Part shown: positions 1,115-55,699 of the stretch, one piece after another
Layout of the letters: each line of letters opens with the position of its first letter
Position numbering within the stretch: position 1 is the first letter of the stretch
IMG/VR virus record: IMGVR_UViG_3300027816_000052
Coordinates: 1-64,000 of that record
Direction: 5' to 3' (one strand)
Length of the DNA stretch: 64,000 nucleotides
Notes under the pieces: model-generated
Databases searched by the model: none
Seen by the model: the letters and a program-made list of their open reading frames with translations, nothing else
What the model was told of the DNA's origin: nothing
Made by a program: the position numbers and the translations under genes

Positions 1115-1506
1115 TATCAATAATAATTTTCATATTAATCGCATTATTTGCAAATAGAGAATCTTCTTTTGATTTTACCAAAATAAAAAATCATGAGAAA
1201 ATTAATCACATTCAATCATGGATATATCGAGCAACTTTTGTTATATTTATAATACTGCTTACGAACCTTTCAATCTTCAATAAAATAATTTTATCGATAG
1301 GTTCAGCATTTTTATTTTCATCAATATTCAGAGCAAGATTAAATCACAGAAGAAAAAAAGATTTAACATATATAAGCAATAGTAATTATTATGATTCATT
1401 TTTTATAAAACTTTTCCCAAAAAAACATGGTATGATGATATATGTTGTTGAAATCATTATCTTTGTAACCCCAACAATAATCTATATAGTAACAAACAAT
1501 GGATAA
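1102..1506 (+). CDS. Membrane protein, hypothetical
   Basis: Several hydrophobic segments; overlaps neighbours in operon fashion. Confidence 0.65.
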   Translation: MVIMISIIIFILIALFANRESSFDFTKIKNHEKINHIQSWIYRATFVIFIILLTNLSIFNKIILSIGSAFLFSSIFRARLNHRRKKDLTYISNSNYYDSFFIKLFPKKHGMMIYVVEIIIFVTPTIIYIVTNNG

Positions 1507-1750
1507 AAAAATATTATACTTTACAGCAGCATGGTGTGGACCATGTAGAGCAATGGCTCCAGCAATTGAAGAACTTTCATCGACTCTGAATATTGAAAAA
1601 ATTGATGTTGACTCAAAGGATGGTAGAATCTTTGATTATAAAATCAAAGCGGTCCCCTCTTTTGTGTTAGTTGACCAACAAAATAATGAATTAAAAAGAG
1701 TTGTCGGACTTCAATCAAAAGATACATTAAGAAATTTGTTTAACGATTAA
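1499..1750 (+). CDS. trxA: Thioredoxin
   Basis: YFTAAWCGPC active site and cis-Pro motif AVPSF. Confidence 0.92.
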   Translation: MDKKILYFTAAWCGPCRAMAPAIEELSSTLNIEKIDVDSKDGRIFDYKIKAVPSFVLVDQQNNELKRVVGLQSKDTLRNLFND

Positions 1751-1753
1751 AAA

Positions 1754-1930
1754 ATGTGGGTTATAGTTAAATTTATTAAAAATAAAGATGGAAAAGAACT
1801 TCCAGTAATTATTTTGGACTCTCAAGAAGAAATATTAGAATTTGAGAATGATGAGGACGCACAAAAACAAAAAAATTTGTTTTTGATTAATTCGGATTCT
1901 GGATATAGATATGAAGTAAAGAAAATTTAA
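1754..1930 (+). CDS. Small hypothetical protein (58 aa, not in ORF track)
   Basis: My translation MWVIVKFIKNKDGKELPVIILDSQEEILEF...YEVKKI; fills the gap between two co-oriented genes. Confidence 0.6.
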   Translation: MWVIVKFIKNKDGKELPVIILDSQEEILEFENDEDAQKQKNLFLINSDSGYRYEVKKI

Positions 1931-1936
1931 CTTCAT

Positions 1937-2131
1937 ATGGATGAATTAAAGAAAAAAATTAAAGAAAGTCACTATAGAAAATTTTTGGGTGTTGCACCTG
2001 AAGGTTTTATTATCATTCCTGAAGTGACATTTGAAAAATTAAAAGATTTTGATTTTTGGAAGGAATGGAAAAATAATCCTGAATATTTGAGGGAAGAAGC
2101 AATTAAAGACACTAAAGAAAATTTTTTTTAG
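1937..2131 (+). CDS. Hypothetical protein
   Basis: 64-aa ORF in operon context. Confidence 0.6.
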   Translation: MDELKKKIKESHYRKFLGVAPEGFIIIPEVTFEKLKDFDFWKEWKNNPEYLREEAIKDTKENFF

Positions 2132-2138
2132 AAAACAT

Positions 2139-2169
2139 TTGGAAGTTTGAAAAGAAGTATCTATCTTTG
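2139..2169 (+). promoter_or_regulatory. Bacteroidota sigma-70-type promoter for tRNA-Ile/Met
   Basis: TTG-N20-TATCTTTG matches the -33/-7 consensus (TTTG / TAnnTTTG). Confidence 0.8.
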
Positions 2170-2181
2170 TGTTGTTAAAAT

Positions 2182-2257
2182 GCTCCTATAGCTCAGTTGG
2201 TCAGAGCGCCAAGCTTATACCTTGGGTCTGTCACAGGTTCAAGTCCTGTTAGGAGTA
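2182..2257 (+). tRNA. tRNA-Ile(UAU)
   Basis: Cloverleaf: GCTCCTA/TAGGAGT; anticodon arm CCAAG-CTTATAC-CTTGG; T-arm ACAGG-TTCAAGT-CCTGT. Confidence 0.88.
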
Positions 2258-2265
2258 CGAAATAT

Positions 2266-2339
2266 TGTGGGGTGGAGCAGATGGTTAGCTCGGAGGTCTC
2301 ATAAATCTCAGGTCGCTGGTTCAAGTCCAGCCCCCGCAA
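2266..2339 (+). tRNA. tRNA-Met(CAU), fMet-like body
   Basis: TGTGGGG/CCCCGCA acceptor; GAGGT-CTCATAA-ATCTC anticodon arm; GCTGG-TTCAAGT-CCAGC T-arm. Confidence 0.9.
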
Positions 2340-2340
2340 C

Positions 2341-2438
2341 AAAATGTTGATTAGTAGTTTAGTGGTTGAACTAAAAAGAAAATCTGACGCTCAGTAGCAA
2401 TAAATACCACCAGTCAGCTTCGTTCTAATTAACATTTT
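2341..2438 (+). ncRNA. Candidate structured RNA with kissing-loop pseudoknot
   Basis: 14-bp closing helix, two internal hairpins, loop GTGGT complementary to ACCAC. Confidence 0.55.
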
Positions 2439-2480
2439 ATTTTTATTGTTCTTTGACATATTTATCTTAAAAAAATTAAT

Positions 2481-2684
2481 ATGCAAAAAATATCTTTTAT
2501 TAAATTTAATTTTAAAAATGGATTAATTCATTTATTGACATTATTTTTTGGTAGTTTAATATTATTACCAATAACAGGTAATGAGATTTTTGAATTTAAA
2601 ATTTGGTTCATTATTTTATTGTTTCTTAGTATCTTTATGACGTACTTCAATTATCGTGTTTGGAAAAAATTAAAAATTAAATAA
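2481..2684 (+). CDS. Small two-TM membrane protein
   Basis: Two hydrophobic helices; preceded by the ATATTTAT motif. Confidence 0.6.
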   Translation: MQKISFIKFNFKNGLIHLLTLFFGSLILLPITGNEIFEFKIWFIILLFLSIFMTYFNYRVWKKLKIK

Positions 2685-3348
2685 TAATTCTTTGATTTAT
2701 TATGTTTGTGATAATATCAAGATATTTTTGAGAGGTAATCTCTTTAAAATATTTTTGTGCTGATGTATCAATAACACAAAAATCAATTTTTGCGTCATGA
2801 CATGCTTTTGACTTTGATTTATCATTTTCTTGAATTTGATTTAATTTTTTAATGCCATAAATTGGTTCATAGTGAAAAATTCCATTAAGTTCAAATGCAA
2901 TATTTAATGATGGAATATAAATATCTAATTCTGAGTTAATAGCTAATTTATCATTAAATTTGATATCTAGGTTTGGGTATAAAAATTCTAACTGCGATTG
3001 AATCCAAATTTCAAGTTTTGATTTTCTGTTGCCGTGTTTTTTATTTTTATTGTTATATGTTGCGGCACAAGATTTCGAACAAAAATGATTTATAGATCTA
3101 GAAATTTGATTATTTGCTTTGATAAATTTTTTATCACAATTAGTACATGTAACCTCTTTTCTTTTTTTTGCTGACAAACCATTACATTGTATTGAACAAA
3201 AACGTAATTGATTTTTTTGTTTTTCAATATTATATTTAATATGTCTTTTTTCAATATAGAAAAAATTATCACAATATTCACATATTAATCTTAACTTATC
3301 AAAATGTTTTGCATTATAATAATCAAATTCTGAATACGCTTTTTTCAT
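2677..3348 (-). CDS. Putative homing endonuclease (Zn-finger repeats plus Vsr/DUF559-like PD-(D/E)xK domain)
   Basis: CxxC...FCSxxC repeats, then ELDIYIPSLNIAFELNGIFHY and a C-terminal K..K..AC motif. Confidence 0.7.
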   Translation of the reverse strand: MKKAYSEFDYYNAKHFDKLRLICEYCDNFFYIEKRHIKYNIEKQKNQLRFCSIQCNGLSAKKRKEVTCTNCDKKFIKANNQISRSINHFCSKSCAATYNNKNKKHGNRKSKLEIWIQSQLEFLYPNLDIKFNDKLAINSELDIYIPSLNIAFELNGIFHYEPIYGIKKLNQIQENDKSKSKACHDAKIDFCVIDTSAQKYFKEITSQKYLDIITNIINQRIII

Positions 3349-3414
3349 TTATACATATATTTATATATAAATATATTAAATTTAATTTTCGAATCTGAAG
3401 TACTTTGAAATTAT

Positions 3415-3499
3415 GGAGGATCCCACTGGCGCGGTACGTAGTCTTGAAAACTATGAGGTCGGTAATACCGATGTGAAGGTTCGAGTCCATCATCCTCCG
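3415..3499 (+). tRNA. tRNA-Ser(UGA)
   Basis: GGAGGAT/ATCCTCC; GTAGT-CTTGAAA-ACTAT; long variable arm; G73. Confidence 0.9.
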
Positions 3500-3510
3500 C
3501 TAGATAAAAT

Positions 3511-3541
3511 TTGGAAGTTTGAAATTTTAGTTGTATCTTTG
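3511..3541 (+). promoter_or_regulatory. Bacteroidota-type promoter for the ncRNA/tRNA-Thr/Gly operon
   Basis: TTG-N20-TATCTTTG. Confidence 0.8.
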
Positions 3542-3543
3542 TA

Positions 3544-3668
3544 GAGCGTGTGAAGCATGTGAGCTAAGTTATCGAGGTGCTTGGTACGATTCGCGGTCGT
3601 GTTGCGCTGGAAACCATCAAAGGTTAAAAGACGTGAAACCAAGTTAAATGGTAAAATCTGACACATTC
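3544..3668 (+). ncRNA. Candidate structured RNA upstream of tRNA-Thr
   Basis: GCTTGGT/ACCAAGT, ACGAT/GTCGT, TGG-AAA-CCA; imperfect closing stem GAGCGTGT/ACACATTC. Confidence 0.4.
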
Positions 3669-3682
3669 AGCCTTAAATTTAC

Positions 3683-3758
3683 GCCACTGTAGCTCAATTG
3701 GCAGAGCACTAGTTTTGTAAACTAGCGGTTAGCGGTTCGACTCCGCTCAGTGGCTCCA
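3683..3758 (+). tRNA. tRNA-Thr(UGU), CCA encoded
   Basis: GCCACTG/CAGTGGC; CTAGT-TTTGTAA-ACTAG; ends TCCA. Confidence 0.95.
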
Positions 3759-3777
3759 AGAGTTCTTTGAAAAAGTT

Positions 3778-3907
3778 TGAGAAAAAGCGGAAGTACGAAA
3801 GTACGGGAAGATTGTGATAAAAAGAACAAGGAAATAGTCCCTCCCATTGCAGTCACAAGCATAATTGGGTAGAGTGGAAAGGTGAGTCCACGAACCGCTT
3901 TTTCTCA
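3778..3907 (+). ncRNA. Candidate structured RNA A
   Basis: Perfect 13-bp closing helix TGAGAAAAAGCGG/CCGCTTTTTCTCA; GTAC-GAAA-GTAC and GTGGA/TCCAC hairpins. Confidence 0.65.
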
Positions 3908-3918
3908 TTTTACATGAA

Positions 3919-4097
3919 AATATAAAATTAGTGAGCAAAGAGAAAGTGACTTCACCAGTCAGCGTAGTATACAACGGAAGCACGGGCAAGAAAGTAGCAT
4001 GGTAGCTACCTGAAATAAAAATCGATTGCTGGGACAAAACTGAAAACGTTTAATTGGATACCCTTAAAATGAAGATATACCTCACTAACTTTATATT
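3919..4097 (+). ncRNA. Candidate structured RNA B
   Basis: 16/17-bp closing helix; internal TGACT/AGTCA and GTAGC/GCTAC hairpins. Confidence 0.65.
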
Positions 4098-4102
4098 AAA
4101 AA

Positions 4103-4246
4103 TTTGTGGTCAGTACGGATTGACGTACCTAGTAAGCTGGTAAATTACATTACGAAGAAACGCTGAAGCGACTAAGAAATGTACTAATATGTAATTATTA
4201 GTGGGTTGTTGTTAAGTCTTAGTATGTTAGTTTTTAACACCACAAA
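4103..4246 (+). ncRNA. Candidate structured RNA C, pseudoknotted
   Basis: TTTGTGGT/ACCACAAA closing stem, AATTACAT/ATGTAATT, loop-loop ACTAAGA/TCTTAGT. Confidence 0.6.
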
Positions 4247-4250
4247 AAAA

Positions 4251-4324
4251 GCGAGTGTAGCTTAGTTGATTAAAGCGCCGTCCTTCCAAGTCGGAGATCG
4301 TCAGTTTGAGTCTGACCACTCGCT
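4251..4324 (+). tRNA. tRNA-Gly(UCC)
   Basis: GCGAGTG/CACTCGC; loop CTTCCAA; U73; T-loop TTTGAGT slightly atypical. Confidence 0.88.
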
Positions 4325-4410
4325 CACTAATCCCCTCTAACCTCTGAAGAAATTCAAGTTATTGGGTAAAACAGTTTCTTTTCATATTTATAGAATAAAC
4401 ATCTATCAAT

Positions 4411-7400
4411 ATGATTAAGAAAATATTTTTATCATTAGCAATACTTGCTTCAATTTTAAGCAATGCTGCAACATATTATGTTTCACCAAACGGAAATGAT
4501 TCAAATAATGGGACTTCAATAACCACTCCGTGGAAAACAATAAGTAAAGTTAACACCAGACAATTAGTAGCTGGGGACCAAATTTTATTTGAACGAAATG
4601 GAACATACAGAGGTAATTTAACAATTAACTATTCGGGTACCGATGTCAACCCAATTCTAATTTCCACTTATGGTAGTGGAAATAACCCCATATTACTTGG
4701 TTCACAATTAATTTCAAACTGGATATTACATCAAGGAAATATTTGGAAGACTCAAGTAAATGCAACACAAGTTGTTCATTTGTTCTTCAATGACAGTTTA
4801 ATGCCAATTGCAAGATATCCAAATAATGGTTGGTTAAGAAATATACAAGGAACAAATTCTCAAATAACAGATAATCAATTAACACAACCAGCGAATTATT
4901 GGAATGGTAGTACAATGGTTATTCGTAGTTCTTCTTGGAGTTATGATACAAGTAGAGTTTTATCATATAGTCCGGGGGTTATTAACTTTAGACCTATTAG
5001 TTATAACTTAGGAAACAGTACGTGGGGTTATTTTATCCGAAATAAATTTCAAGAATTAGATGCCCCCGGTGAATGGTTTTTTGATAAGACCATCAACACA
5101 TTATATTTTTACTCCCCAACAGGAAACCCAAATTTAAACGCGATTGAAATAATAACAGCCAATCAATCAACAAATGGTGTAGGAATAAGGGTTACTTGGC
5201 AAAGAAATAATATTATTATTGAAAATCTTACAATTAATAAGTATGGTTATGCTGGTGTTAGCACAAGCGGTACATCTAATATAACTGTAAGAAATTGTAA
5301 TATTAGTCAATGTGATCATGGTATGTGGTTATATGGTAATAATCAAATTATTAGAAATAATTTCATCACAAAATGTCCCCAAATGGGTTTAAATGCTGTT
5401 TCTGGTGGAAGCCCAATTAGTTATGGAAACAACAATACATTTGAAGATAATACCATCCAAAATTGTGCATTATATCCCGGTCTTGGAAAAAGCTCATGGG
5501 GTTATTTCGGAATGACCGTCACTGGTTCCAATAATATAATAAGAAAAAATAATATTACAAATATTGGTTATATTGCATTATCTTTCGAATCAAACCCATT
5601 AATTGAAAATAACTTTATAAGTAATGCATGTTCAATTTTAAATGATGGTTCTGGTATTGCATTTGATAGAACAAATGGTGCTGTTATTAGAAATAACATT
5701 GTTTTAAATACAATTGGTAATATTGAAAGTTGTGCAACAAATACAACCAACTGTGACCCAAAAGGTAAAGGAATATATTTTGGAAATGTTAGCAATAAAA
5801 ATAATTTAGTTGATGGTAATACTGTCGCATATTGTAACGGTGCTGGTATTTGGTTTGATCATACTATGCTATCAGAAGGTAATCAAATTATTAATAATAC
5901 CTTATTTGGGAACAATTTATATCAATTAGGTATTTCAGATTTTTCAAACTATAATAGTCCCGGAGCAATTGCTCCTTATGCAGTTCCGGTGTATAGTAAC
6001 CAACTTGTTAGAAATAATATTTTTTATTCAAATAACCAACAACAGAAAACCATGTACCACATAAATAAGTGGTATTCTGGTGTTGATTTTGCAAATTTTA
6101 ATGAAAATAAATATATTAACCCTTGGGATACTGTTAGTATTCAAGTTTTTGATATAGCAAATAATGGTAATTCTTTAAATTATTCATTAAATCAATGGAA
6201 AAATGTTAGAGGTGATGACTCTTTATCTACAAACCAACCTTATCTCCCTCAATCCGAATCATCTGATCATATTTTGGTTTATAATAATCAAATAACAGAA
6301 CAATCAATTAGTTTACCAAGTGGTACTTGGTCAGATTTAAACGGTAATTTATATAATTCTTCAATTAATATACCAGCATTTGAATCAAAACCTTTATTTA
6401 ATTCATTATTACTTCCTCCACCACCCTCAACCCCAAGCACTATTGTTTCTTTATTGGTTCAAGCTAGTGTTAATTCAACAACACCATCAATTACACTTTC
6501 ATGGATTAGTTATTCCACTGCAACAGGTTATTCTGTGTTCAGAAAATTAAAAAATGCAACATCTTGGGGAAGCGCAATAGCTACCTTAGGGGGTAGTGCA
6601 ACTCAGTATGTTGATAATAACGTTTCTTTAAATACATATTATGAATATCGTGTTGTTAGAAACGCTTCTGTTGGTACTGCATATGGTTATGTTGCAACAG
6701 GTATTAATCTCAATACAATTGATTATAGAGGTAAGCTAATATTAGTTGTTGATAATACATTTACAAGTAGTTTATCTTCACAACTAACTCAATTACAAAA
6801 TGATCTAAAATTAGATGGTTGGAATGTTATTAGAGTTGATGTTTCAAGAACAACAACACCAGCGTCAGTAAAATCTCAAATACAGACAATTTACAATACT
6901 GATCCAACTAATGTAAAATCAGTTTTATTATTTGGGCATGTTCCGGTTTATCGTTCTGGTAATATTGCACCAGATGGACATAGTTTAATTCCTTGGGCAT
7001 GTGATTCCTATTATGGTGATATGAATGGTTCTTGGACAACACCTCCCACAGCATTACCTTCAGATTTGGAGTTACAAGTGGGGAGGATTGATTTATTTAA
7101 TTTACCCGCGTTTGGACAAACAGAACAACAATTATTGTCAAATTATTTAACTAAATTACATCAATTTAAAACAAAACAATTTACTCCTCAAAACAGAATG
7201 TTAATTCAGGATAATTTAACTTGGGTTAATAATCCACTAGCTGAAACTTCTTATAGAACTGGTGGTCCTTTAGTTGGTGAAGCAAATATTACAACAATAC
7301 CAGCAAATAATCAACCAAATTTTGTATCAAGAATGTCTGATGGTTGGTTATGGGGTTATTTTTCTGGTGGTGGAACATACAATTCCGCTGCTGGGATTGG

Positions 7401-8766
7401 TAATACATCAAATTTCGCAACAACACAAAATAATGTAGTTTTCAATATGAGTTTGGGTAGTTATTTTGGTAATTGGGATTCTAGTACACCAGTTCCGGAT
7501 TGGAATAATAACAATAATAATTTATTAAGAGCGGTATTAGCTAGCGGTCAAGCACTTACAAACGTTTGGGCGGGTTTACCAAATTGGTTTTTCCACCACA
7601 TGGGAATGGGAGATCCTATTGGTTATTCAACAATGTTAACCATTAATAATAGAACATCAAACGCATTATATCAATTACAAAATGGTGGTTGGCAAGGACA
7701 AGGATTAACAACAGTACATCTTGGTTTAATGGGTGATCCGTCATTAAGAATGAATTATGTTGCACCTCCAAGTAATTTAACAATAATTAATAATGGAAAT
7801 TCGTTAACATTTAACTGGACAGCATCAGCAGAGCAGGTTGATGGGTATTATTTATATGAAATTGTTTCTGGTGTACCAACAAGAATAACACCAAATCTAA
7901 TTACAACAAATACATTAACTGGGAATTTTAACTTAACCACTGGTACAGAATATATGGTTAGAGCGGTTAAATTGGTTAATAATTTTAGTGGTAGTTATTA
8001 TAATTTATCATTAGGTTCGGCAAATACGGTACCACAATCGGTAGCACCAACATTAATAGCAAAAGTTTTTCTAGGTGGTGCGTATGATAATGGTTTAATG
8101 TATGATTCATTACGTGTTAAAAATTTAATACCACTTTCTGATCCTTATCCCGCTTTAGGTTATACACATGTAATAGGTGGTGGACAAACGACAACGCAAT
8201 CCGTTTTAACAGTTTCAGGAAATTCAGCAATTGTTGATTGGGTGGTTATTGAATTAAGGAATGCAACCACACCATCAACCAGAGTATACACAAGAAGTGC
8301 TTTAATCCAAAGAGACGGTGATATTGTTGATATGGATGGTGTATCACCGGTTAGTTTACAAATAACTAGTGGTCAGTATTATGTTGCAATTAAACATCGA
8401 AATCACTTGGGCGTTATGACAGCGCAACCTATTTCTTTGCAGAACAACACAATAATTAATTTTACAACAATTGCAACATTTGGAACCGAAGCTCAAAAAA
8501 CAATTGGTTCTGTAAAAGTAATGTGGGATGGTAATTCTAATTTTGATGACATAATCAAATATACCGGTCAAAATAATGATAGGGATTTTATCTTATCTAG
8601 AATTGGTGGTGTAATTCCAACTAATGTTGTAACAGGATATTATTCAGAAGATTTAAATATGGATGGTTTTGTTAAATACACCGGTCAAAATAATGATAGA
8701 GATATTATCTTATTTAATATTGGTGGTACAACACCTACAAATACAAAAGTTCAACAGATTCCTTGA
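4411..8766 (+). CDS. Large secreted multidomain protein: right-handed beta-helix, FN3-like, C25 (gingipain)-like domain, FN3-like, Bacteroidota-type C-terminal domain
   Basis: Signal peptide; ATYYVSPNGNDSNNG and parallel beta-helix repeats; LILVVD...VLLFGHVP...YYGD...VGRID; C-terminal duplicated DxNxDGxVKYTGxNNDRD. Confidence 0.75.
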   Translation: MIKKIFLSLAILASILSNAATYYVSPNGNDSNNGTSITTPWKTISKVNTRQLVAGDQILFERNGTYRGNLTINYSGTDVNPILISTYGSGNNPILLGSQLISNWILHQGNIWKTQVNATQVVHLFFNDSLMPIARYPNNGWLRNIQGTNSQITDNQLTQPANYWNGSTMVIRSSSWSYDTSRVLSYSPGVINFRPISYNLGNSTWGYFIRNKFQELDAPGEWFFDKTINTLYFYSPTGNPNLNAIEIITANQSTNGVGIRVTWQRNNIIIENLTINKYGYAGVSTSGTSNITVRNCNISQCDHGMWLYGNNQIIRNNFITKCPQMGLNAVSGGSPISYGNNNTFEDNTIQNCALYPGLGKSSWGYFGMTVTGSNNIIRKNNITNIGYIALSFESNPLIENNFISNACSILNDGSGIAFDRTNGAVIRNNIVLNTIGNIESCATNTTNCDPKGKGIYFGNVSNKNNLVDGNTVAYCNGAGIWFDHTMLSEGNQIINNTLFGNNLYQLGISDFSNYNSPGAIAPYAVPVYSNQLVRNNIFYSNNQQQKTMYHINKWYSGVDFANFNENKYINPWDTVSIQVFDIANNGNSLNYSLNQWKNVRGDDSLSTNQPYLPQSESSDHILVYNNQITEQSISLPSGTWSDLNGNLYNSSINIPAFESKPLFNSLLLPPPPSTPSTIVSLLVQASVNSTTPSITLSWISYSTATGYSVFRKLKNATSWGSAIATLGGSATQYVDNNVSLNTYYEYRVVRNASVGTAYGYVATGINLNTIDYRGKLILVVDNTFTSSLSSQLTQLQNDLKLDGWNVIRVDVSRTTTPASVKSQIQTIYNTDPTNVKSVLLFGHVPVYRSGNIAPDGHSLIPWACDSYYGDMNGSWTTPPTALPSDLELQVGRIDLFNLPAFGQTEQQLLSNYLTKLHQFKTKQFTPQNRMLIQDNLTWVNNPLAETSYRTGGPLVGEANITTIPANNQPNFVSRMSDGWLWGYFSGGGTYNSAAGIGNTSNFATTQNNVVFNMSLGSYFGNWDSSTPVPDWNNNNNNLLRAVLASGQALTNVWAGLPNWFFHHMGMGDPIGYSTMLTINNRTSNALYQLQNGGWQGQGLTTVHLGLMGDPSLRMNYVAPPSNLTIINNGNSLTFNWTASAEQVDGYYLYEIVSGVPTRITPNLITTNTLTGNFNLTTGTEYMVRAVKLVNNFSGSYYNLSLGSANTVPQSVAPTLIAKVFLGGAYDNGLMYDSLRVKNLIPLSDPYPALGYTHVIGGGQTTTQSVLTVSGNSAIVDWVVIELRNATTPSTRVYTRSALIQRDGDIVDMDGVSPVSLQITSGQYYVAIKHRNHLGVMTAQPISLQNNTIINFTTIATFGTEAQKTIGSVKVMWDGNSNFDDIIKYTGQNNDRDFILSRIGGVIPTNVVTGYYSEDLNMDGFVKYTGQNNDRDIILFNIGGTTPTNTKVQQIP

Positions 8767-18046: not shown

Positions 18047-18421
18047 TGGTGGAGATGGAGGGTTTCGAAACCCTCGTCTTCCGCTGTCAACCTAAAGAGA
18101 CTACACGCTTAGAACAACATTAGTTCTTAATGTTTCGAAATATCAAGTTTCACTATATACCAACTTGCAAAGGTTTTCTTTGGTTAATTTTAAGTATCAA
18201 CCACACTTTTTTTGGAATTTCTGTTGCTAGGTAAATTCCCAAATTACCCCTTGTAGGTGTTAGCCTTAGGCTACAGCTACTTCTTCAGTCTTGATGAGAC
18301 CCAAAACTGACATCTTGTCTAAAACGTTGCCGTTTACTTGTTTGAACCATTTTAACAAGGTTGATTCACCCTTGACGTGCCTATTTAACCTAATCATCGG
18401 AATCAAATCCAACTCATCCCC
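18047..18421 (-). ncRNA. ssrA: tmRNA, tag (A)GNVLDKMSVLGLIKTEEVAVA
   Basis: 5' GGGGATGAGTTGGATTTGATTCCG; 3' CGGAAGACGAGGG-TTTCGAAA-CCCTCCATCTCCACCA; G3:U70; tag frame 18331..18269 ending TAA. Confidence 0.93.
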
Positions 18422-18442
18422 ATATATTTTCAAAGAACAATG

Positions 18443-36402: not shown

Positions 36403-36433
36403 CAAAGATATAACTTTATTTTCTTATCTCCAA
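36403..36433 (-). promoter_or_regulatory. Bacteroidota-type promoter for the Leu-His-Trp-Val-Ala tRNA run
   Basis: TTG-N20-TATCTTTG. Confidence 0.8.
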
Positions 36434-36442
36434 ATTAAACTG

Positions 36443-41334: not shown

Positions 41335-41339
41335 ATAAG

Positions 41340-41473
41340 CGGGGGAGGTTGGATTCGCACCAACAATCGTTACATTTCAGAGTAATTGCTTTACTGTTTC
41401 GAAGTATCTCATATTCTCACCACTCGGACGAGGGAAAATGAAATGAGTTTTTCTTTTTATTAGCTTCTCCCCC
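41340..41473 (-). ncRNA. tRNA-like RNA with large D-loop insertion and 8-nt anticodon loop
   Basis: GGGGGAG/CTCCCCC, GCT/AGC D-stem, TTAC/GTAA, GTTGG-TGCGAAT-CCAAC. Confidence 0.7.
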
Positions 41474-41485
41474 AAGAAATTATAG

Positions 41486-41568
41486 TGGATGTTGACGGAA
41501 TCGAACCGCGTTTCCAAACAGCACCCCCAACCTCATCATGAACGGTCGGTCAAGGTTTAGCAACACCC
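41486..41568 (-). ncRNA. tmRNA-TLD-like / Ala-acceptor tRNA-like RNA (83 nt)
   Basis: GGGTGTTG/CAACATCC with G3:U70, A73, T-loop TTCGATT, no D-stem. Confidence 0.7.
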
Positions 41569-41579
41569 AAAAAAGTTAG

Positions 41580-41653: not shown

Positions 41654-41658
41654 TTATG

Positions 41659-41792
41659 TGATGAGTGATGGATTCGAACCACCATAAGCTGCTTCGTTTA
41701 GGATATCCTCTAAGCAACAGCGGGATATGTATAGTGTTGGGTAACTATATCACTAATATCCACCGCAACCCGTTCCCTTGGGCTATCTCATC
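41659..41792 (-). ncRNA. tRNA-like RNA with extended anticodon and variable arms
   Basis: GATGAG/CTCATC, GCCC/GGGT D-stem, GGTGG-TTCGAAT-CCATC T-arm, no canonical anticodon loop. Confidence 0.7.
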
Positions 41793-41797
41793 AAATT

Positions 41798-41942
41798 GAG
41801 AGGACACCGATACCTCCTCTCTGGGTGGGTCTAATTTCGAATTCTTTTATGACTTGTTCTGAAAGTCGCCAACATACTCATCATTTCTGATTTAGTCATT
41901 GCACGTCCCACTTAACTTTAAACGCGGTCGGTTTTAAGGTAT
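41798..41942 (-). ncRNA. Candidate structured RNA downstream of tRNA-Pro
   Basis: GTGGG/CCCAC, GACTT/AAGTC, GAGAGGA/TCCTCTC, ATACCT/AGGTAT. Confidence 0.45.
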
Positions 41943-41950
41943 GTATTGTG

Positions 41951-42168: not shown

Positions 42169-42199
42169 CAAAGTTATGTCTTATTCTTCAAACTACCAA
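42169..42199 (-). promoter_or_regulatory. Bacteroidota-type promoter for the main tRNA/ncRNA operon
   Basis: TTG-N20-TAACTTTG. Confidence 0.75.
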
Positions 42200-42220
42200 A
42201 ACTTTTTTGGTATAAAATTT

Positions 42221-52558: not shown

Positions 52559-55500
52559 ATGGAAGATGAAAAACTAACAATATGGCAACGACTTTCTAAA
52601 GGATTTGGTCCAAACTCATTACTTGGACAAGAAAGTCCAACATTTAAATTTGATAAGAAGGTTTTATTAAAAACACCGAATAAGCAAGAGTACGAAAGAG
52701 AAAAACTCCAAGCACAACAAACAGCTTATTTAACATACCAATGGAGTAAGATTGAAAATAATTTATATACACAATCAGTATATTATGAACCCACTAGATT
52801 AGCATCATATTATGATTATGAGAGTATGGAATATTTTCCGGAAATTTCAGCAGCATTAGATACATTTTCGGAAGAATCTACAACGCCAAATCAAGATGGT
52901 CAAATGTTACAGATTTATTCTGAATCAAAAAGAATTAAATCAATTTTAACAGATTTATTCTATAATCAATTAGATATTAACACAAATCTACCCATGTGGA
53001 CAAGAAATACTTGTAAGTATGGTGATAATTTTGTGTTTTTAAAACTAGACCCAGAAAAAGGTATTGTTGGTTGTTTTCAACTACCAAATATTGAAATTGA
53101 ACGTATTGAAAAGGGGATGGTTAAACGTCCGGGTGGGACACCAAATAGCGACCCAGAAAATAAACAAATGAAATTCTCTTGGAAACAAAAAGATTTAGAT
53201 TTTAATACTTGGGAGGTCGCACATTTTAGATTATTGGGTGATGATAGAAAATTACCATACGGTACTTCGATGTTAGAAAAAGCGAGAAGAATTTGGAAAC
53301 AATTAGTTCTTGCTGAAGATGCAATGTTAATTTATAGAACATCTAGAGCACCGGAAAGAAGAGTATTTAAAGTTTTTGTTGGTAATATGGATGATAAAGA
53401 TGTTGAAGCATATGTGCAAAGATTTGCAAATAAATTTAAGCGAGACCAAGTAGCGGACCCAAAAACGGGTAATGTGGATTTACGTTTTAATCAAATGGCG
53501 GTAGACCAAGATTATTTTGTACCGGTTAGGGATATTGCTGCACCTAATCCGATTGATACATTACCGGGAGCGTGTATTGATTTAAATACCAGAATTCCCC
53601 TTCTTGATGGTAGAACTTTAACTTTACAACAAATAATTAATGAGTGGGATAATGGTAATAGAAACTTATGGGTTTATTCTTGTGACCCAAATACAGGGTC
53701 CGTACATCCGGGTATGGTAACTTGGGCTGGTGTAACAAGAAAAGACGCTGAAGTTATTAAAATTACATTAGACAATGGTGAAGAGGTGATTACAACTCCA
53801 GACCATAAATTTGTTCATAGAACTAGAGAATTTGTTGAAGCGAAAGATTTAATTGTTGGGGATAGTTTAATGCCTTTTTATTCAAGAACCGAAAAAATAA
53901 AGACCAACACTAATGATTATCACCAAATTTTTGATAATGAAAAAAATCAATGGGTTTTTACGCATAGAATGGTAAAAAACAGTACTGTTGGTAGTTCTTT
54001 AGTAAAAGAATGGGTTTTTAATTCTGAATTTAAAAATAAAGATAAAAAAATAATTCACCATAAAGACCATAATCGCTTTAATAATAATCCAAATAATTTA
54101 CTAATAATGAATGGTGAAGACCATTTAAAATATCACCAACATATCATAAAAGAAACGATTTGGAAAGATATTGAACTTAATAAGAAAAAAATTTCAGAAG
54201 GTATTAAAAATTATTTAAATAATCTTTCTTCAGATGAATTACAAAAAAGACATGAAAGAATTAATAATCCAATATCAAAAGCTAAAACAACTAAAAAGTT
54301 ATTGGAATGGAATAAAAATGATGAAAATTTAAAAAATAAAGGTAAAAAAATTTCAAAAGCTTATACAGAAGAAAGAAAAAATAAGATAAAGGAATTAAAT
54401 TTAATAAGGTGGTTGAATGATGATTATCGAAATAAAGTTTTTTCTAAAAAACAAACAATAACATTTGATGATTATATATATAATTCATTTGTTAGTGAAT
54501 TTAAAAAGACTTTACGTGCTGATTTAGCGTTAAAGAACTTAAATAATTCTTTTGAATTTATTTCACATTTTAAACAAATTAATGAGGAAATTAGAAGTTC
54601 GTTAACAAACTTAAATGAATTCACGCAAAACCATGTAGATAAAATGGTTAAACAACAAGGGTTTAAAAATTTTACTGAATGGAAACATTTTGAGTGTAAA
54701 AAGAGAGGATTTAAAAATATTCGTCAATGGAAATATAATGTTGAGAAAGAAATTTATTTTAACCATAAAATAACAAAAATTGAATGGTTAACAAATAAAA
54801 TTGACACTGGTACGATTACGGTTGATGGTAATGAATTATATTCAAAATCTCACACTTTTGCTATTGAAAGTGGTATTTTTATTAAAAATTCTAACCTTTC
54901 TGAAATTGCAGATATAGAATACATCCAGAAAAAACTTTTAACAGCATTAAGGATACCAAAAGCGTTCCTTGGGTTTGAAGAAGTTGTTGCTGATGGTAAA
55001 AATCTTGCGTTACAAGATATTCGTTTTGCTAGAACAATTAACAGAATACAAAAAAGTATGTTAGCGGAATTAAATAAAATTGCTATTATACATTTATTTA
55101 TTTTAGGTTTTGAAGATGAACTTTCTAACTTTACATTAGGATTAACAAACCCATCAACACAAGCTGATTTATTAAAGGTTGAGGTTTGGAAAGAGAAAAT
55201 CTTACTTTATAAAGACGCTGTTGCAGGAATTGAGGGTATTGCACCAACTTCACATTCTTGGGCTAAAAAACATATTCTTGGTTTCTCGGATGATGAAATT
55301 AAACTTGATATTCAACAACAAAGAATTGAAAAGGCGGTCGCAAAAGAACTTGAGAACACACCAAATGTGATTGTAAAAACAGGTATTTTTGATAGTGTTG
55401 ATGCAATCTACGGTCAAAAAGGTGGTGGTACTCAAGCTGGAACTCCCCCTCAAGAACCAACATCTGATATGACAATGCCTGAAACTAGTCCAGCATCATC

Positions 55501-55699
55501 ACCATCAATAACTCCACCAGAAGCTCCTGAGAGCGCACCAACTGAAACTCCAACAACAGTACCTGAATCAAAACAGGAAAGAGTAAATATTTTACTTGAA
55601 GGTGGTCTTTTAAATGAAGATGAAGAAATCGATTTGAGTAAAGCTAGAATTCAATTAGGTGAAATGGAAGAACATTTAAATAAACTTCTAAAGTCGTGA
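52559..55699 (+). CDS. gp20: Portal protein (T4 gp20-like) containing an intein
   Basis: YPEISAALD, MLIYRTSRAPERRVF, DYFVP, IDTLPGA|...|SNLSEIADIEYIQKKL. Confidence 0.92.
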   Translation: MEDEKLTIWQRLSKGFGPNSLLGQESPTFKFDKKVLLKTPNKQEYEREKLQAQQTAYLTYQWSKIENNLYTQSVYYEPTRLASYYDYESMEYFPEISAALDTFSEESTTPNQDGQMLQIYSESKRIKSILTDLFYNQLDINTNLPMWTRNTCKYGDNFVFLKLDPEKGIVGCFQLPNIEIERIEKGMVKRPGGTPNSDPENKQMKFSWKQKDLDFNTWEVAHFRLLGDDRKLPYGTSMLEKARRIWKQLVLAEDAMLIYRTSRAPERRVFKVFVGNMDDKDVEAYVQRFANKFKRDQVADPKTGNVDLRFNQMAVDQDYFVPVRDIAAPNPIDTLPGACIDLNTRIPLLDGRTLTLQQIINEWDNGNRNLWVYSCDPNTGSVHPGMVTWAGVTRKDAEVIKITLDNGEEVITTPDHKFVHRTREFVEAKDLIVGDSLMPFYSRTEKIKTNTNDYHQIFDNEKNQWVFTHRMVKNSTVGSSLVKEWVFNSEFKNKDKKIIHHKDHNRFNNNPNNLLIMNGEDHLKYHQHIIKETIWKDIELNKKKISEGIKNYLNNLSSDELQKRHERINNPISKAKTTKKLLEWNKNDENLKNKGKKISKAYTEERKNKIKELNLIRWLNDDYRNKVFSKKQTITFDDYIYNSFVSEFKKTLRADLALKNLNNSFEFISHFKQINEEIRSSLTNLNEFTQNHVDKMVKQQGFKNFTEWKHFECKKRGFKNIRQWKYNVEKEIYFNHKITKIEWLTNKIDTGTITVDGNELYSKSHTFAIESGIFIKNSNLSEIADIEYIQKKLLTALRIPKAFLGFEEVVADGKNLALQDIRFARTINRIQKSMLAELNKIAIIHLFILGFEDELSNFTLGLTNPSTQADLLKVEVWKEKILLYKDAVAGIEGIAPTSHSWAKKHILGFSDDEIKLDIQQQRIEKAVAKELENTPNVIVKTGIFDSVDAIYGQKGGGTQAGTPPQEPTSDMTMPETSPASSPSITPPEAPESAPTETPTTVPESKQERVNILLEGGLLNEDEEIDLSKARIQLGEMEEHLNKLLKS
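53573..54889 (+). mobile_element. Intein (439 aa) with HNH homing endonuclease
   Basis: CIDLNTRIPLLDG, TTPDHKF block B, WVFTHR...IHHKDHNRFNNNPNNL, HTFAIESGIFIKN|S. Confidence 0.9.

What the first reader, a model, noticed from the sequence alone, without database searches (positions are those of the whole stretch)
3919..4097. Structured RNA B: 179-nt multi-hairpin domain
Seen: AATATAAAATTAGTGAG/CTCACTAACTTTATATT (16 of 17 bp) encloses TGACT-TCACC-AGTCA, CGT-N8-ACG, GTAGC-ATGGTA-GCTAC and GGG...CCC. It abuts RNA A and RNA C with only 5-11 nt between them. The three could be independent RNAs or domains of one ~470-nt RNA in the style of large phage ncRNAs (ROOL/GOLLD class); that link is inference.
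Basis: partly seen in the sequence, partly recalled or inferred. Interest (0 to 1): 0.65.

Follow-up and report, generated by a model that had tools for sequence, protein, structure and literature searches.

The report
Lineage-specific insert in abundant phage RNA
The 179-base stretch is a stem-closed segment inside a very abundant ~480-base non-coding RNA that a freshwater jumbo phage makes together with its tRNAs, but the phage's closest relatives keep only the first third of that RNA, so the flagged segment looks like a recent add-on rather than a conserved RNA machine.

Summary
The 17-nt inverted repeat (3919-3935 / 4081-4097, 16 of 17) is real and rarer than chance. The 145-nt interior folds no better than shuffled sequence (z = +0.55), so "multi-hairpin domain" is not supported.

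The window is the start of a 256-kb freshwater jumbo phage, probably infecting Flavobacteriales. B sits in an ORF-free tRNA operon: tRNA-Ser, leader, tRNA-Thr, A, B, C, tRNA-Gly.

In three metatranscriptomes one contig covers ~3772-4250 at depth 139, 54 and 11.5, against 0-5 on flanking genes. A, B and C therefore form one abundant transcribed unit, ending where RNase P would cut tRNA-Gly.

No Rfam family matches at E <= 10, including ROOL and GOLLD.

The only syntenic relatives, R84 and R3, keep domain A with compensatory changes and a preserved GNRA loop. They lack B and C: A is followed within ~15 nt by tRNA-Gly. No B homologue was found in any collection searched.

Best reading: B is a lineage-specific, stem-insulated expansion segment of a new tRNA-operon stable RNA whose conserved core is A. 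It is not a ROOL/GOLLD member. Its function is unknown, and it may be a tolerated passenger.

The parts
3399..3410 (+). Leader motif AGTACTTTGAAA. An RNA 5' end maps just after it at 3411, 4 nt before tRNA-Ser.
   Evidence: Direct repeat D5. Motif scans. The joint 3760->3411 places a 5' end at 3411.
3415..3500 (+). tRNA-Ser (UGA)
   Evidence: ARAGORN. Rfam matches it only as tRNA-Sec-like, below the gathering score.
3510..3541 (+). Bacteroidota-type promoter (TTTG-N20-TATCTTTG) that would drive the leader, tRNA-Thr, A-B-C and tRNA-Gly
   Evidence: Pattern TTTG-N18-22-TAnnTTTG gives 12 matches against 5.2 expected. Four of them, with the shared form TTTGG[AT]AGTTTGAA...TA[TA]CTTTG, lie upstream of tRNA arrays. 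The site is conserved in R84 and R3. Promoter function is inferred.
3545..3682 (+). Operon leader 'pre', with a core of about 110 nt that is almost invariant among three lineages
   Evidence: Alignment A6. L283 sequence.
3683..3758 (+). tRNA-Thr (UGU) with encoded CCA
3761..3772 (+). Second copy of the leader motif, AGTTCTTTGAAA. The abundant RNA contig begins at its last base, and the motif is missing from the RNA contigs of run X11.
   Evidence: A third copy lies 6 nt upstream of the tmRNA 5' end, at 18428-18439 on the - strand.
3772..4250 (+). Abundant transcribed unit A+B+C, about 479 nt
   Evidence: Contigs at 3772-4250 (depth 138.9), 3775-4280 (54) and 3795-4268 (11.5) in RNA runs X11, X13 and X15. 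Flanks are at 0-5. Strand is inferred from the flanking tRNAs, the GNRA loop and the A-rich loops.
3778..3907 (+). Domain A, the conserved core: a 13-bp closing stem and four hairpins
   Evidence: z = -4.75. It is 83% identical to R84 and R3. All 33 predicted pairs are kept, with two compensatory pairs plus one extra A-U pair, and the loop GAAA becomes GUAA.
3919..4097 (+). Domain B, the finding: a 17-bp closing helix with one A-C mismatch around a 145-nt A-rich interior
   Evidence: Absent from R84 and R3.
4103..4246 (+). Domain C: an 8-bp closing stem (TTTGTGGT / ACCACAAA) with internal hairpins
   Evidence: z = -2.90. Absent from R84 and R3.
3916..4250 (+). Indel of about 335 nt (B+C) relative to the syntenic relatives. 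It lies between the tail of A and the first base of tRNA-Gly.
   Evidence: The gap from tRNA-Thr to tRNA-Gly is 492 nt here, 169 nt in L187-L190 and 165 nt in L285 and L286. Alignments A4 and A7.
4251..4325 (+). tRNA-Gly (UCC). Its 5' end coincides with the 3' end of the abundant contig in run X11.

Best explanation
B is the middle segment of a ~480-nt non-coding RNA (about 3772-4250, + strand) that the phage transcribes with its tRNAs.

Proposed biogenesis:
- A Bacteroidota-type promoter at 3510-3541, and read-through from tRNA-Ser, produce a polycistronic precursor.
- The precursor is cut just after the leader motif GUUCUUUGAAA. That gives the 5' end at about 3772.
- RNase P cuts at the 5' end of tRNA-Gly. 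That gives the 3' end at 4250.
- The product accumulates far above neighbouring mRNAs.

The conserved, covarying core of this RNA is domain A. B, together with C, is a lineage-specific block of about 335 nt that the nearest relatives do not have. It is either an insertion in this phage or a deletion in the relatives.

B consists of one long closing helix that pairs its own two ends, around an A-rich interior with little stable structure. That helix insulates B, so it does not disturb the folding or processing of A and tRNA-Gly. This is probably why it is tolerated.

B is most likely an expansion segment or passenger of a new phage stable RNA. It is not an independently conserved RNA machine.

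Shown: the sequence features, the abundance in RNA libraries, the contiguity of A-B-C, the absence of B and C from relatives, and covariation in A.

Inferred: the strand, the promoter, the cleavage enzymes, and the lack of an independent function for B.
For: Sequence and repeat.

Abundant single contig spanning A-B-C in three RNA runs, at 139, 54 and 11.5 against 0-5 on the flanks. The neighbouring tRNA-Ser/leader/tRNA-Thr unit reaches only 10.9 and 3-4 in the same runs. The X11 contig ends exactly at 4250 | 4251.

Non-coding: there is no + strand ORF of 40 aa or more between 3545 and 4410. The 96-aa - strand ORF has no Pfam match and overlaps tRNA-Thr and the covarying A stem.

Each domain closes on itself in the MFE, centroid and high-probability structures of the full RNA.

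Promoter consensus shared by four tRNA operons. The leader motif lies in front of three stable-RNA 5' ends.

Synteny and indel: L187-L190 (84% identical beta-helix neighbour) and L285/L286 carry tRNA-Thr, A and tRNA-Gly with no B or C.

A is conserved with compensatory changes and no broken pair.

The interior of B is thermodynamically unremarkable.

No B homologue anywhere searched.
Against: - The contigs give one depth figure each and no strand. It is therefore not shown that B is as abundant as A, that the RNA is the + strand, or that the unit is not cut further at the domain boundaries.
- Folding z-scores are better on the - strand (-5.5 against -2.9 for the whole unit). The single mismatch in B's stem is A-C on the + strand but G-U on the - strand.
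- R84 and R3 are closer to each other than to this phage, so there is only one split. The indel cannot be polarised, and B and C could be ancestral and functional, then lost in the other branch.
- Absence of homologues may reflect sparse sampling of this phage group.
Confidence: 0.55

Rival explanations
1. A, B and C together are one functional large structured RNA. This would be a new class working like ROOL or GOLLD, for example a self-assembling or scaffold RNA made with phage tRNAs. B and C would be functional domains that the R84/R3 branch lost or never needed.
For: One abundant contig of about 480 nt in three RNA runs. The tRNA-island context matches what is described for ROOL and GOLLD (PMC5737381; bioRxiv 10.1101/2024.12.08.627333). 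The loops are A-rich and A carries a GNRA loop that could make tertiary contacts. The whole RNA gives z = -2.85.
Against: No Rfam hit. B and C are missing from the only relatives, which keep A alone. The interior of B shows no excess structure. No predicted inter-domain pairing. No covariation data exist for B or C.
Confidence: 0.2
2. B is a small mobile or palindromic DNA element (MITE-like or REP-like, with 17-bp terminal inverted repeats) that landed in the tRNA operon and is transcribed only as a passenger.
For: Terminal inverted repeats. B is part of a presence/absence polymorphism between close relatives. The same region also gained or lost a nuclease gene that looks like a homing endonuclease. 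Other stem-closed modules come and go in these operons, such as the one in L283.
Against: B is single-copy. There is no second copy in the 256-kb genome, in 1.7 Mb of related phage loci, among 50,697 phage records or in 533 Bacteroidia genomes. No clear target-site duplication: the flanks are A/T runs and share only 1 nt of microhomology. The indel covers B and C together, not B alone.
Confidence: 0.12
3. B is released as an independent small RNA of about 180 nt, for example by RNase III cutting its 17-bp stem, and acts on its own as a decoy or regulator.
For: B has a long closing helix and short linkers of 5-11 nt to its neighbours. T4 makes separate stable RNAs from its tRNA cluster (from my own knowledge of T4 rnaC and rnaD, not checked here).
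Against: The contigs run uninterrupted across both boundaries, so spanning reads exist. B has no copy of the leader motif that precedes the other stable-RNA 5' ends. B is not conserved. No significant complementarity to the genome.
Confidence: 0.08
4. The feature is a chance inverted repeat in a rapidly degraded spacer, or part of a - strand protein gene.
For: The genome is AT-rich, and about one such repeat per genome is expected by chance. A 96-aa - strand ORF exists at 3747-4037.
Against: Depth is 10-50 times that of flanking genes, and more than 10 times that of the adjacent operon spacer. Three stem-closed units lie in a row. The ORF has no family match and runs through tRNA-Thr and the covarying A helices.
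Confidence: 0.05

Closest known systems
ROOL and GOLLD large phage/prophage RNAs (Rfam families; PMC5737381; bioRxiv 10.1101/2024.12.08.627333)
   Same: Phage-encoded, several hundred nucleotides long, next to or within tRNA islands, probably co-transcribed with tRNAs, abundant, function unknown.
   Different: No match to either covariance model at E <= 10. The unit is shorter (479 nt, against about 581 and over 800). It is built from three serial stem-closed domains with no predicted pseudoknots or long-range junctions. Two thirds of it (B and C) are absent from the nearest relatives.
Stable RNAs species 1 and 2 (rnaC, rnaD) in the tRNA gene cluster of bacteriophage T4 (from my own knowledge; no open paper found)
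   Same: Non-tRNA stable RNAs encoded among phage tRNA genes, made from the same precursors and released by tRNA-processing enzymes. Function unknown.
   Different: The T4 RNAs are about 120-140 nt each and separate. Here a unit of about 480 nt is seen. There is no sequence relation, and processing has not been tested here.
Expansion segments and variable insertions in conserved structured RNAs (rRNA, RNase P, tmRNA)
   Same: A lineage-specific block closed by its own helix, inserted beside a conserved covarying core (A), and tolerated because it folds on itself.
   Different: B and C are appended after the closing stem of A, not inserted into one of its helices. They double or triple the size of the RNA.
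MITE or REP-type palindromic insertions
   Same: Terminal inverted repeats, a presence/absence polymorphism, and a non-coding interior.
   Different: Single copy in every collection searched, with no recognisable target-site duplication.

Membership tests
ROOL (Rfam) | [quoted passage not shown] | tested here: not met
   cmscan of 3300-4450 on both strands at E <= 10 lists only tRNA-related and two spurious hits. The gathering-threshold scan of the whole window finds only tRNAs and a tmRNA.
GOLLD (Rfam) | Match to the GOLLD covariance model, with its conserved 3' domain, over about 800 nt | tested here: not met
   no hit.
ROOL/GOLLD-like (functional analogy) | Located in a phage tRNA island and co-expressed with tRNAs | tested here: met
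   The unit is flanked by tRNA-Thr and tRNA-Gly, and its RNA contig ends at the tRNA boundaries.
ROOL/GOLLD-like (functional analogy) | Homo-oligomeric cage assembly | not testable with these tools
   This needs cryo-EM, SEC-MALS or similar measurements on the transcript.
Conserved structured ncRNA (general criterion) | Homologues with covarying base pairs | tested here: not met
   For B: no homologue with model R2 or nhmmer, and B is absent from the syntenic relatives. For A the criterion is met, though with only three sequences in two distinct forms.
MITE or palindromic mobile element | Multiple dispersed copies sharing terminal inverted repeats | tested here: not met
   no second copy.
MITE or palindromic mobile element | Target-site duplication flanking the inverted repeats | tested here: inconclusive
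   The flanks are A/T runs (GAA | ... | AAAAA). A TA or AA duplication can be neither excluded nor shown.
tRNA or tRNA-like element | Cloverleaf with a T-arm | tested here: not met
   ARAGORN and the Rfam tRNA clan find nothing between 3759 and 4250.
Self-cleaving ribozymes (hammerhead, twister, pistol, hatchet, HDV-like) | Match to the Rfam models. This was considered because discrete RNA ends and a circular-type joint lie nearby. | tested here: not met
   none at E <= 10.

The most novel reading that the evidence does not exclude
The ~480-nt A-B-C transcript is a new class of abundant, phage-encoded large structured RNA in freshwater jumbo phages of Flavobacteriales. It would have a conserved core (A) and modular, exchangeable stem-closed domains (B, C, and the L283 module) that are swapped between phages much as tRNA genes are. 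A dedicated leader motif (GUUNUUUGAAA), shared with the phage tmRNA and tRNA operons, would mark its processing. In this reading B is a functional accessory domain, for example a binding platform or decoy, rather than a passenger.
Probability: 0.2. Interest if true: 0.7.

Novelty: new variant of a known kind. Interest (0 to 1): 0.45.

Why it matters
Non-tRNA RNAs encoded in phage tRNA islands, such as ROOL, GOLLD and the T4 stable RNAs, are abundant and widespread, yet none has a known function.

This locus adds an uncultivated freshwater example with direct environmental expression evidence. It also offers a natural comparison: one phage carries A+B+C, and two relatives carry A alone. That comparison separates a conserved core, which is worth structural and functional study, from add-on segments.

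The locus further shows that tRNA operons in these phages gain and lose stem-closed RNA modules. The shared leader motif in front of the tmRNA, tRNA-Ser and this RNA points to a common processing step that could be tested.

For the flagged 179 nt themselves the result is sobering. The closing helix is real, but there is no evidence that B is a conserved structured RNA.

Tried and rejected
Searches for known families and homologues:
- Rfam at gathering and at E <= 10: only tRNAs and a tmRNA. ROOL, GOLLD, RNase P, 6S, Y RNA and the ribozyme families are all rejected.
- blastn (distant mode) against 50,697 phage records: only tRNA matches.
- Self-search of the 256-kb genome: no second copy of the leader, A, B or C.
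- Exact-pattern scans of IMG/VR with a B string, the 3' end of tRNA-Thr, the 5' end of tRNA-Gly and a conserved A string: only the identical contig L004.
- nhmmer over 1.46 Mb, and covariance models of A (R1) and B (R2) over 1.45-1.72 Mb of jumbo-phage loci. These were reached through the zf-FCS nuclease and included a whole 270-kb relative with 69% identical TerL. R1 alone was also run on five whole relative records. Only short AT-rich hairpin hits resulted.
- R2 with filters off on the syntenic relatives: nothing.
- BLAST of the 479 nt against 132 plus 401 Bacteroidia genomes: only chance matches of 20-60 nt. Not found in those searched.

Other tests:
- Microdiversity: eight DNA contigs of the same phage from different samples differ by at most one base over 1,062 nt, so there is no population-level covariation to use.
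- Neighbour-gene routes to relatives. The zf-FCS nuclease gave thousands of hits, but synteny was not conserved. TerL relatives at 68-72% lack the whole left-arm region. Other beta-helix homologues lie in unrelated contexts.
- Paralogy among the leader, A, B and C: none.
- The - strand 96-aa ORF: no Pfam match.
- The motif AGTWCTTTGAAA as a promoter: rejected in favour of a transcribed leader or processing signal. At the tmRNA a canonical TATCTTTG -7 box lies upstream of the motif, and at A the motif follows tRNA-Thr within the operon.

Not used or not possible:
- The genome search with 'relatives' is not available for virus records.
- The search of protein representatives, structure prediction and complex prediction were not needed and not used.

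Full report
**Setting**

The window is the first 64 kb of a 256,029-bp IMG/VR virus record, CheckV 85% complete and 29.9% G+C. It encodes terminase, portal, major head protein and tail proteins, 22 tRNAs and a tmRNA.

The host is probably a freshwater member of the Flavobacteriales. The gene downstream of the finding (4411-8766, a 1,451-aa beta-helix protein) has bacterial homologues annotated as Flavobacteriales T9SS proteins. The tRNA operons also carry Bacteroidota-type TTTG / TAnnTTTG promoters.

**The observation**

The closing inverted repeat is I1: 3919-3935 / 4081-4097, 16 of 17 complementary, with 145 nt between the arms.

Repeats of this quality and spacing occur 6 times in the genome, against 0-2 in block shuffles. 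The helix is predicted with probability above 0.7 even when the whole 479-nt RNA is folded.

The interior is a different matter. Region 3936-4080 folds no better than shuffled sequence: z = +0.55, with 143 of 200 shuffles as good or better.

B as a whole scores z = -1.48 on the + strand and -2.94 on the - strand. The one mismatch in the stem is A-C on the + strand and G-U on the - strand.

**Surroundings**

Region 3349-4410 has no + strand ORF of 40 aa or more after 3544. Its layout is as follows:

| Feature | Coordinates |
|---|---|
| tRNA-Ser | 3415-3500 |
| Leader ('pre') | 3501-3682 |
| tRNA-Thr-CCA | 3683-3758 |
| Domain A | 3778-3907 (13-bp perfect closing stem) |
| Domain B | 3919-4097 |
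| Domain C | 4103-4246 (8-bp closing stem) |
| tRNA-Gly | 4251-4325 |

G+C is 32-39% in these elements against 30% genome-wide. In MFE, centroid and high-probability structures each domain closes on itself, with no cross-domain pairs. A is strongly structured (z = -4.75), and C moderately so (z = -2.90).

**Expression**

Six freshwater metatranscriptome runs hold the stretch. I laid four of them on 1300-7200, which is 5,901 letters and within the operators' limit.

| Run | Contig | Depth | Depth of flanking genes |
|---|---|---|---|
| X11 | 3772-4250 | 138.9 | 0-5 |
| X13 | 3775-4280 | 54 | 0-5 |
| X15 | 3795-4268 | 11.5 | 0-5 |

The adjacent tRNA-Ser/leader/tRNA-Thr unit (3411-3760) reaches only 10.9 in X11 and 3-4 in X13. 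DNA carry-over cannot produce a 10-50-fold local excess.

A, B and C are therefore transcribed, contiguous at the k-mer level, and much more abundant than a neighbouring spacer of the same operon. The deepest contig ends at 4250, the base before tRNA-Gly, which is where RNase P would cut. It starts at 3772, the last base of a 12-nt motif.

There are limits. Contigs give one depth per contig, no strand and only approximate ends. I cannot show that B is as abundant as A, nor exclude later cuts between the domains.

I infer the + strand from four things: the flanking + strand tRNAs, the contig edges at tRNA boundaries, a GNRA tetraloop in A that stays GNRA in relatives (GAAA to GUAA), and A-rich loops. 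Folding z-scores alone would favour the - strand.

**Signals around the unit**

The pattern TTTG-N18-22-TAnnTTTG gives 12 matches in the window against 5.2 expected. Four of them share the form TTTGG[AT]AGTTTGAA...TA[TA]CTTTG and sit upstream of tRNA arrays. One is at 3510-3541, ahead of the leader, tRNA-Thr and A-B-C.

The extended motif GT[AT]CTTTGAAA occurs only three times in 256 kb:
- 4 nt before tRNA-Ser.
- Immediately before the abundant RNA.
- 6 nt before the tmRNA.

At the tmRNA a canonical TATCTTTG box lies upstream of the motif, so the motif is transcribed. I read it as a leader or processing signal, not a promoter (inference).

Runs X9 and X11 also contain a direct joint 3760->3411. 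Whether this is a true 350-nt circle or end-to-end template switching, it marks discrete RNA ends just after motif copy 1 and just before motif copy 2.

**Known families**

No Rfam family other than tRNA reaches E <= 10 in 3300-4450. That excludes detectable membership of ROOL, GOLLD, RNase P, 6S, Y RNA, tmRNA and the self-cleaving ribozymes.

**Relatives**

Eight DNA contigs of the same phage from different samples are identical, bar one base, over 1,062 nt.

The neighbouring zf-FCS nuclease gene has more than 4,400 homologues, but none above 63% identity, and synteny is not kept. Covariance models of A and B, and nhmmer, found nothing in 1.45-1.72 Mb of such loci, which included a whole 270-kb relative with 69% identical TerL. 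The A model also found nothing in five whole relative records.

The decisive relatives came through the downstream beta-helix protein. P0122, 84% identical, lies on four contigs from different samples (L187-L190, "R84"). These share the gene order thioredoxin, small ORFs, tRNA-Ile, a 65-aa ORF, tRNA-Ser, leader, tRNA-Thr, tRNA-Gly and the beta-helix gene. A third lineage, "R3", was reached via L283, L285 and L286.

Window 3439-3912 aligns to L187 2894-3370 at 82.7% identity. tRNA-Gly aligns separately.

In both relatives A is followed after about 15 nt by tRNA-Gly. The gap from tRNA-Thr to tRNA-Gly is 169 nt in R84 and 165 nt in R3, against 492 nt here (alignments). B and C, about 335 nt (3916-4250), are therefore absent. 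The junction shares only a single G, and no target-site duplication is evident. Model R2 with filters off finds no B elsewhere on those contigs.

**Domain A is a real conserved RNA**

Between this phage and R84 or R3, all 33 predicted pairs stay canonical. Two pairs change on both sides (C-G to U-A in the closing stem, U-A to C-G in the last hairpin). The closing stem gains one A-U pair. The remaining 16 differences fall in loops.

R84 and R3 have identical A sequences although their flanking tRNA-Thr and tRNA-Gly genes differ. This suggests A, with its leader motif, is kept as a cassette.

**What B most likely is**

B is a lineage-specific, stem-insulated block that, with C, extends a conserved tRNA-operon stable RNA from about 140 nt to about 480 nt. 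The proposed biogenesis has three parts:
- Transcription from the operon promoter or promoters (inferred).
- A 5' end formed after the leader motif (position shown approximately, enzyme unknown).
- A 3' end formed by RNase P at tRNA-Gly (position shown in one run, enzyme inferred).

Because B pairs its own ends, it should not interfere with A or tRNA-Gly. That would explain why such an insertion is tolerated and stable.

Modular turnover seems typical here. R3 carries a different 150-nt stem-closed module after AGAGTTATTTGAAA, between tRNA-Ile and tRNA-Met, that this phage and R84 lack. The zf-FCS nuclease gene is also present here and absent there.

With only one phylogenetic split I cannot tell insertion from deletion, and I cannot exclude that B has acquired a function.

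**Rivals**

- A functional tripartite large RNA working like ROOL or GOLLD remains possible, at about 0.2.
- A MITE-like element lacks the defining multi-copy feature.
- An independently released sRNA is not favoured, given the uninterrupted contigs and the missing leader motif.
- A chance repeat in a degraded spacer, or a - strand gene, is contradicted by the abundance, by the row of three closed units, and by covariation in A across the ORF.

**Verdict**

The closing helix and the transcription are confirmed, and the "one ~470-nt RNA" option is supported at the level of contigs. ROOL/GOLLD membership is rejected, and conservation of B is refuted in the nearest relatives.

The more interesting objects are domain A, the nearly invariant leader core at 3566-3660, and the leader motif shared with the tmRNA.

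Noticed in passing
window 3545-3682 (core about 3566-3660): The operon leader between tRNA-Ser and tRNA-Thr has a core of about 110 nt that is almost invariant across this phage, R84 and R3: 2 changes in R84 and about 4 in R3. Flanking sequence is about 83% identical. The core is more conserved than the tRNAs, has no Rfam match, and its fold gives z = +0.31.
   Followed up: partly
window 3411-3760: RNA runs X9 and X11 contain a direct joint 3760->3411. This is either a 350-nt circular RNA (tRNA-Ser + leader + tRNA-Thr-CCA + AG) or end-to-end template switching. In either case it marks discrete ends 4 nt before tRNA-Ser and 2 nt after CCA.
   Followed up: partly
window 3399-3410 (+), 3761-3772 (+), 18428-18439 (-): The motif GT[AT]CTTTGAAA occurs only three times in the 256-kb genome. 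Each copy lies 0-6 nt upstream of a stable-RNA 5' end: tRNA-Ser, the A-B-C RNA and the tmRNA. R84 and R3 have TGTTCTTTAAAA before A, and L283 has AGAGTTATTTGAAA before another module.
   Followed up: partly
window 2138-2169 (+), 3510-3541 (+), 36403-36434 (-), 42169-42200 (-): A shared Bacteroidota-type promoter consensus, TTTGG[AT]AGTTTGAA...TA[TA]CTTTG, lies upstream of four tRNA arrays.
   Followed up: partly
window 2677-3348 (-): A 223-aa protein combines an FCS-type zinc finger with a C-terminal half whose conserved E-x-D...E-x-N-G-x-x-H motif looks like a PD-(D/E)XK or Vsr-type nuclease. It has more than 4,400 homologues on jumbo-phage contigs, sometimes two per contig, and those examined lie among tRNA genes. 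It is absent from the syntenic relatives R84 and R3. It is probably a free-standing homing endonuclease of tRNA islands.
   Followed up: partly
window 41335-41578 and 41654-41949 (- strand): Two inter-tRNA gaps with 42-43% G+C contain T-arm-like GGUUCGAnUCC strings and acceptor-like ends. They are probably tRNA genes carrying long insertions or introns that ARAGORN misses. Similar cases occur in relatives: G001 165682-166125, L283 1884-1996, and the 87-92-nt tRNA-Lys genes in L020.
   Followed up: no
L283 1727-1880: A different stem-closed, multi-hairpin module of about 150 nt (12-bp closing stem, 11 of 12) lies between tRNA-Ile and tRNA-Met in lineage R3. It is absent from this phage, where those tRNAs are 7 nt apart, and from R84.
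   Followed up: partly
window 18047-18421 (-): The phage encodes a full-length tmRNA (100 bits), with a canonical TATCTTTG -7 box about 25 nt upstream.
   Followed up: no
window 52559-55699 (+): The portal protein gene is 1,046 aa long and contains an HNH-endonuclease-like segment at residues about 448-535. This suggests an intein or an inserted nuclease domain.
   Followed up: no
L191 9132-10568: A beta-helix homologue on a contig of up to 452 kb lies near a TROVE (Ro60-like) gene. That large phage or bacterium may have a Y-RNA system.
   Followed up: no
genome 238.3-240.7 kb (outside the window): A cluster of long inverted repeats (17 and 19 nt perfect, plus several of 12-13 nt) lies within about 2.3 kb of small ORFs. 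It may be another structured or regulatory region.
   Followed up: no
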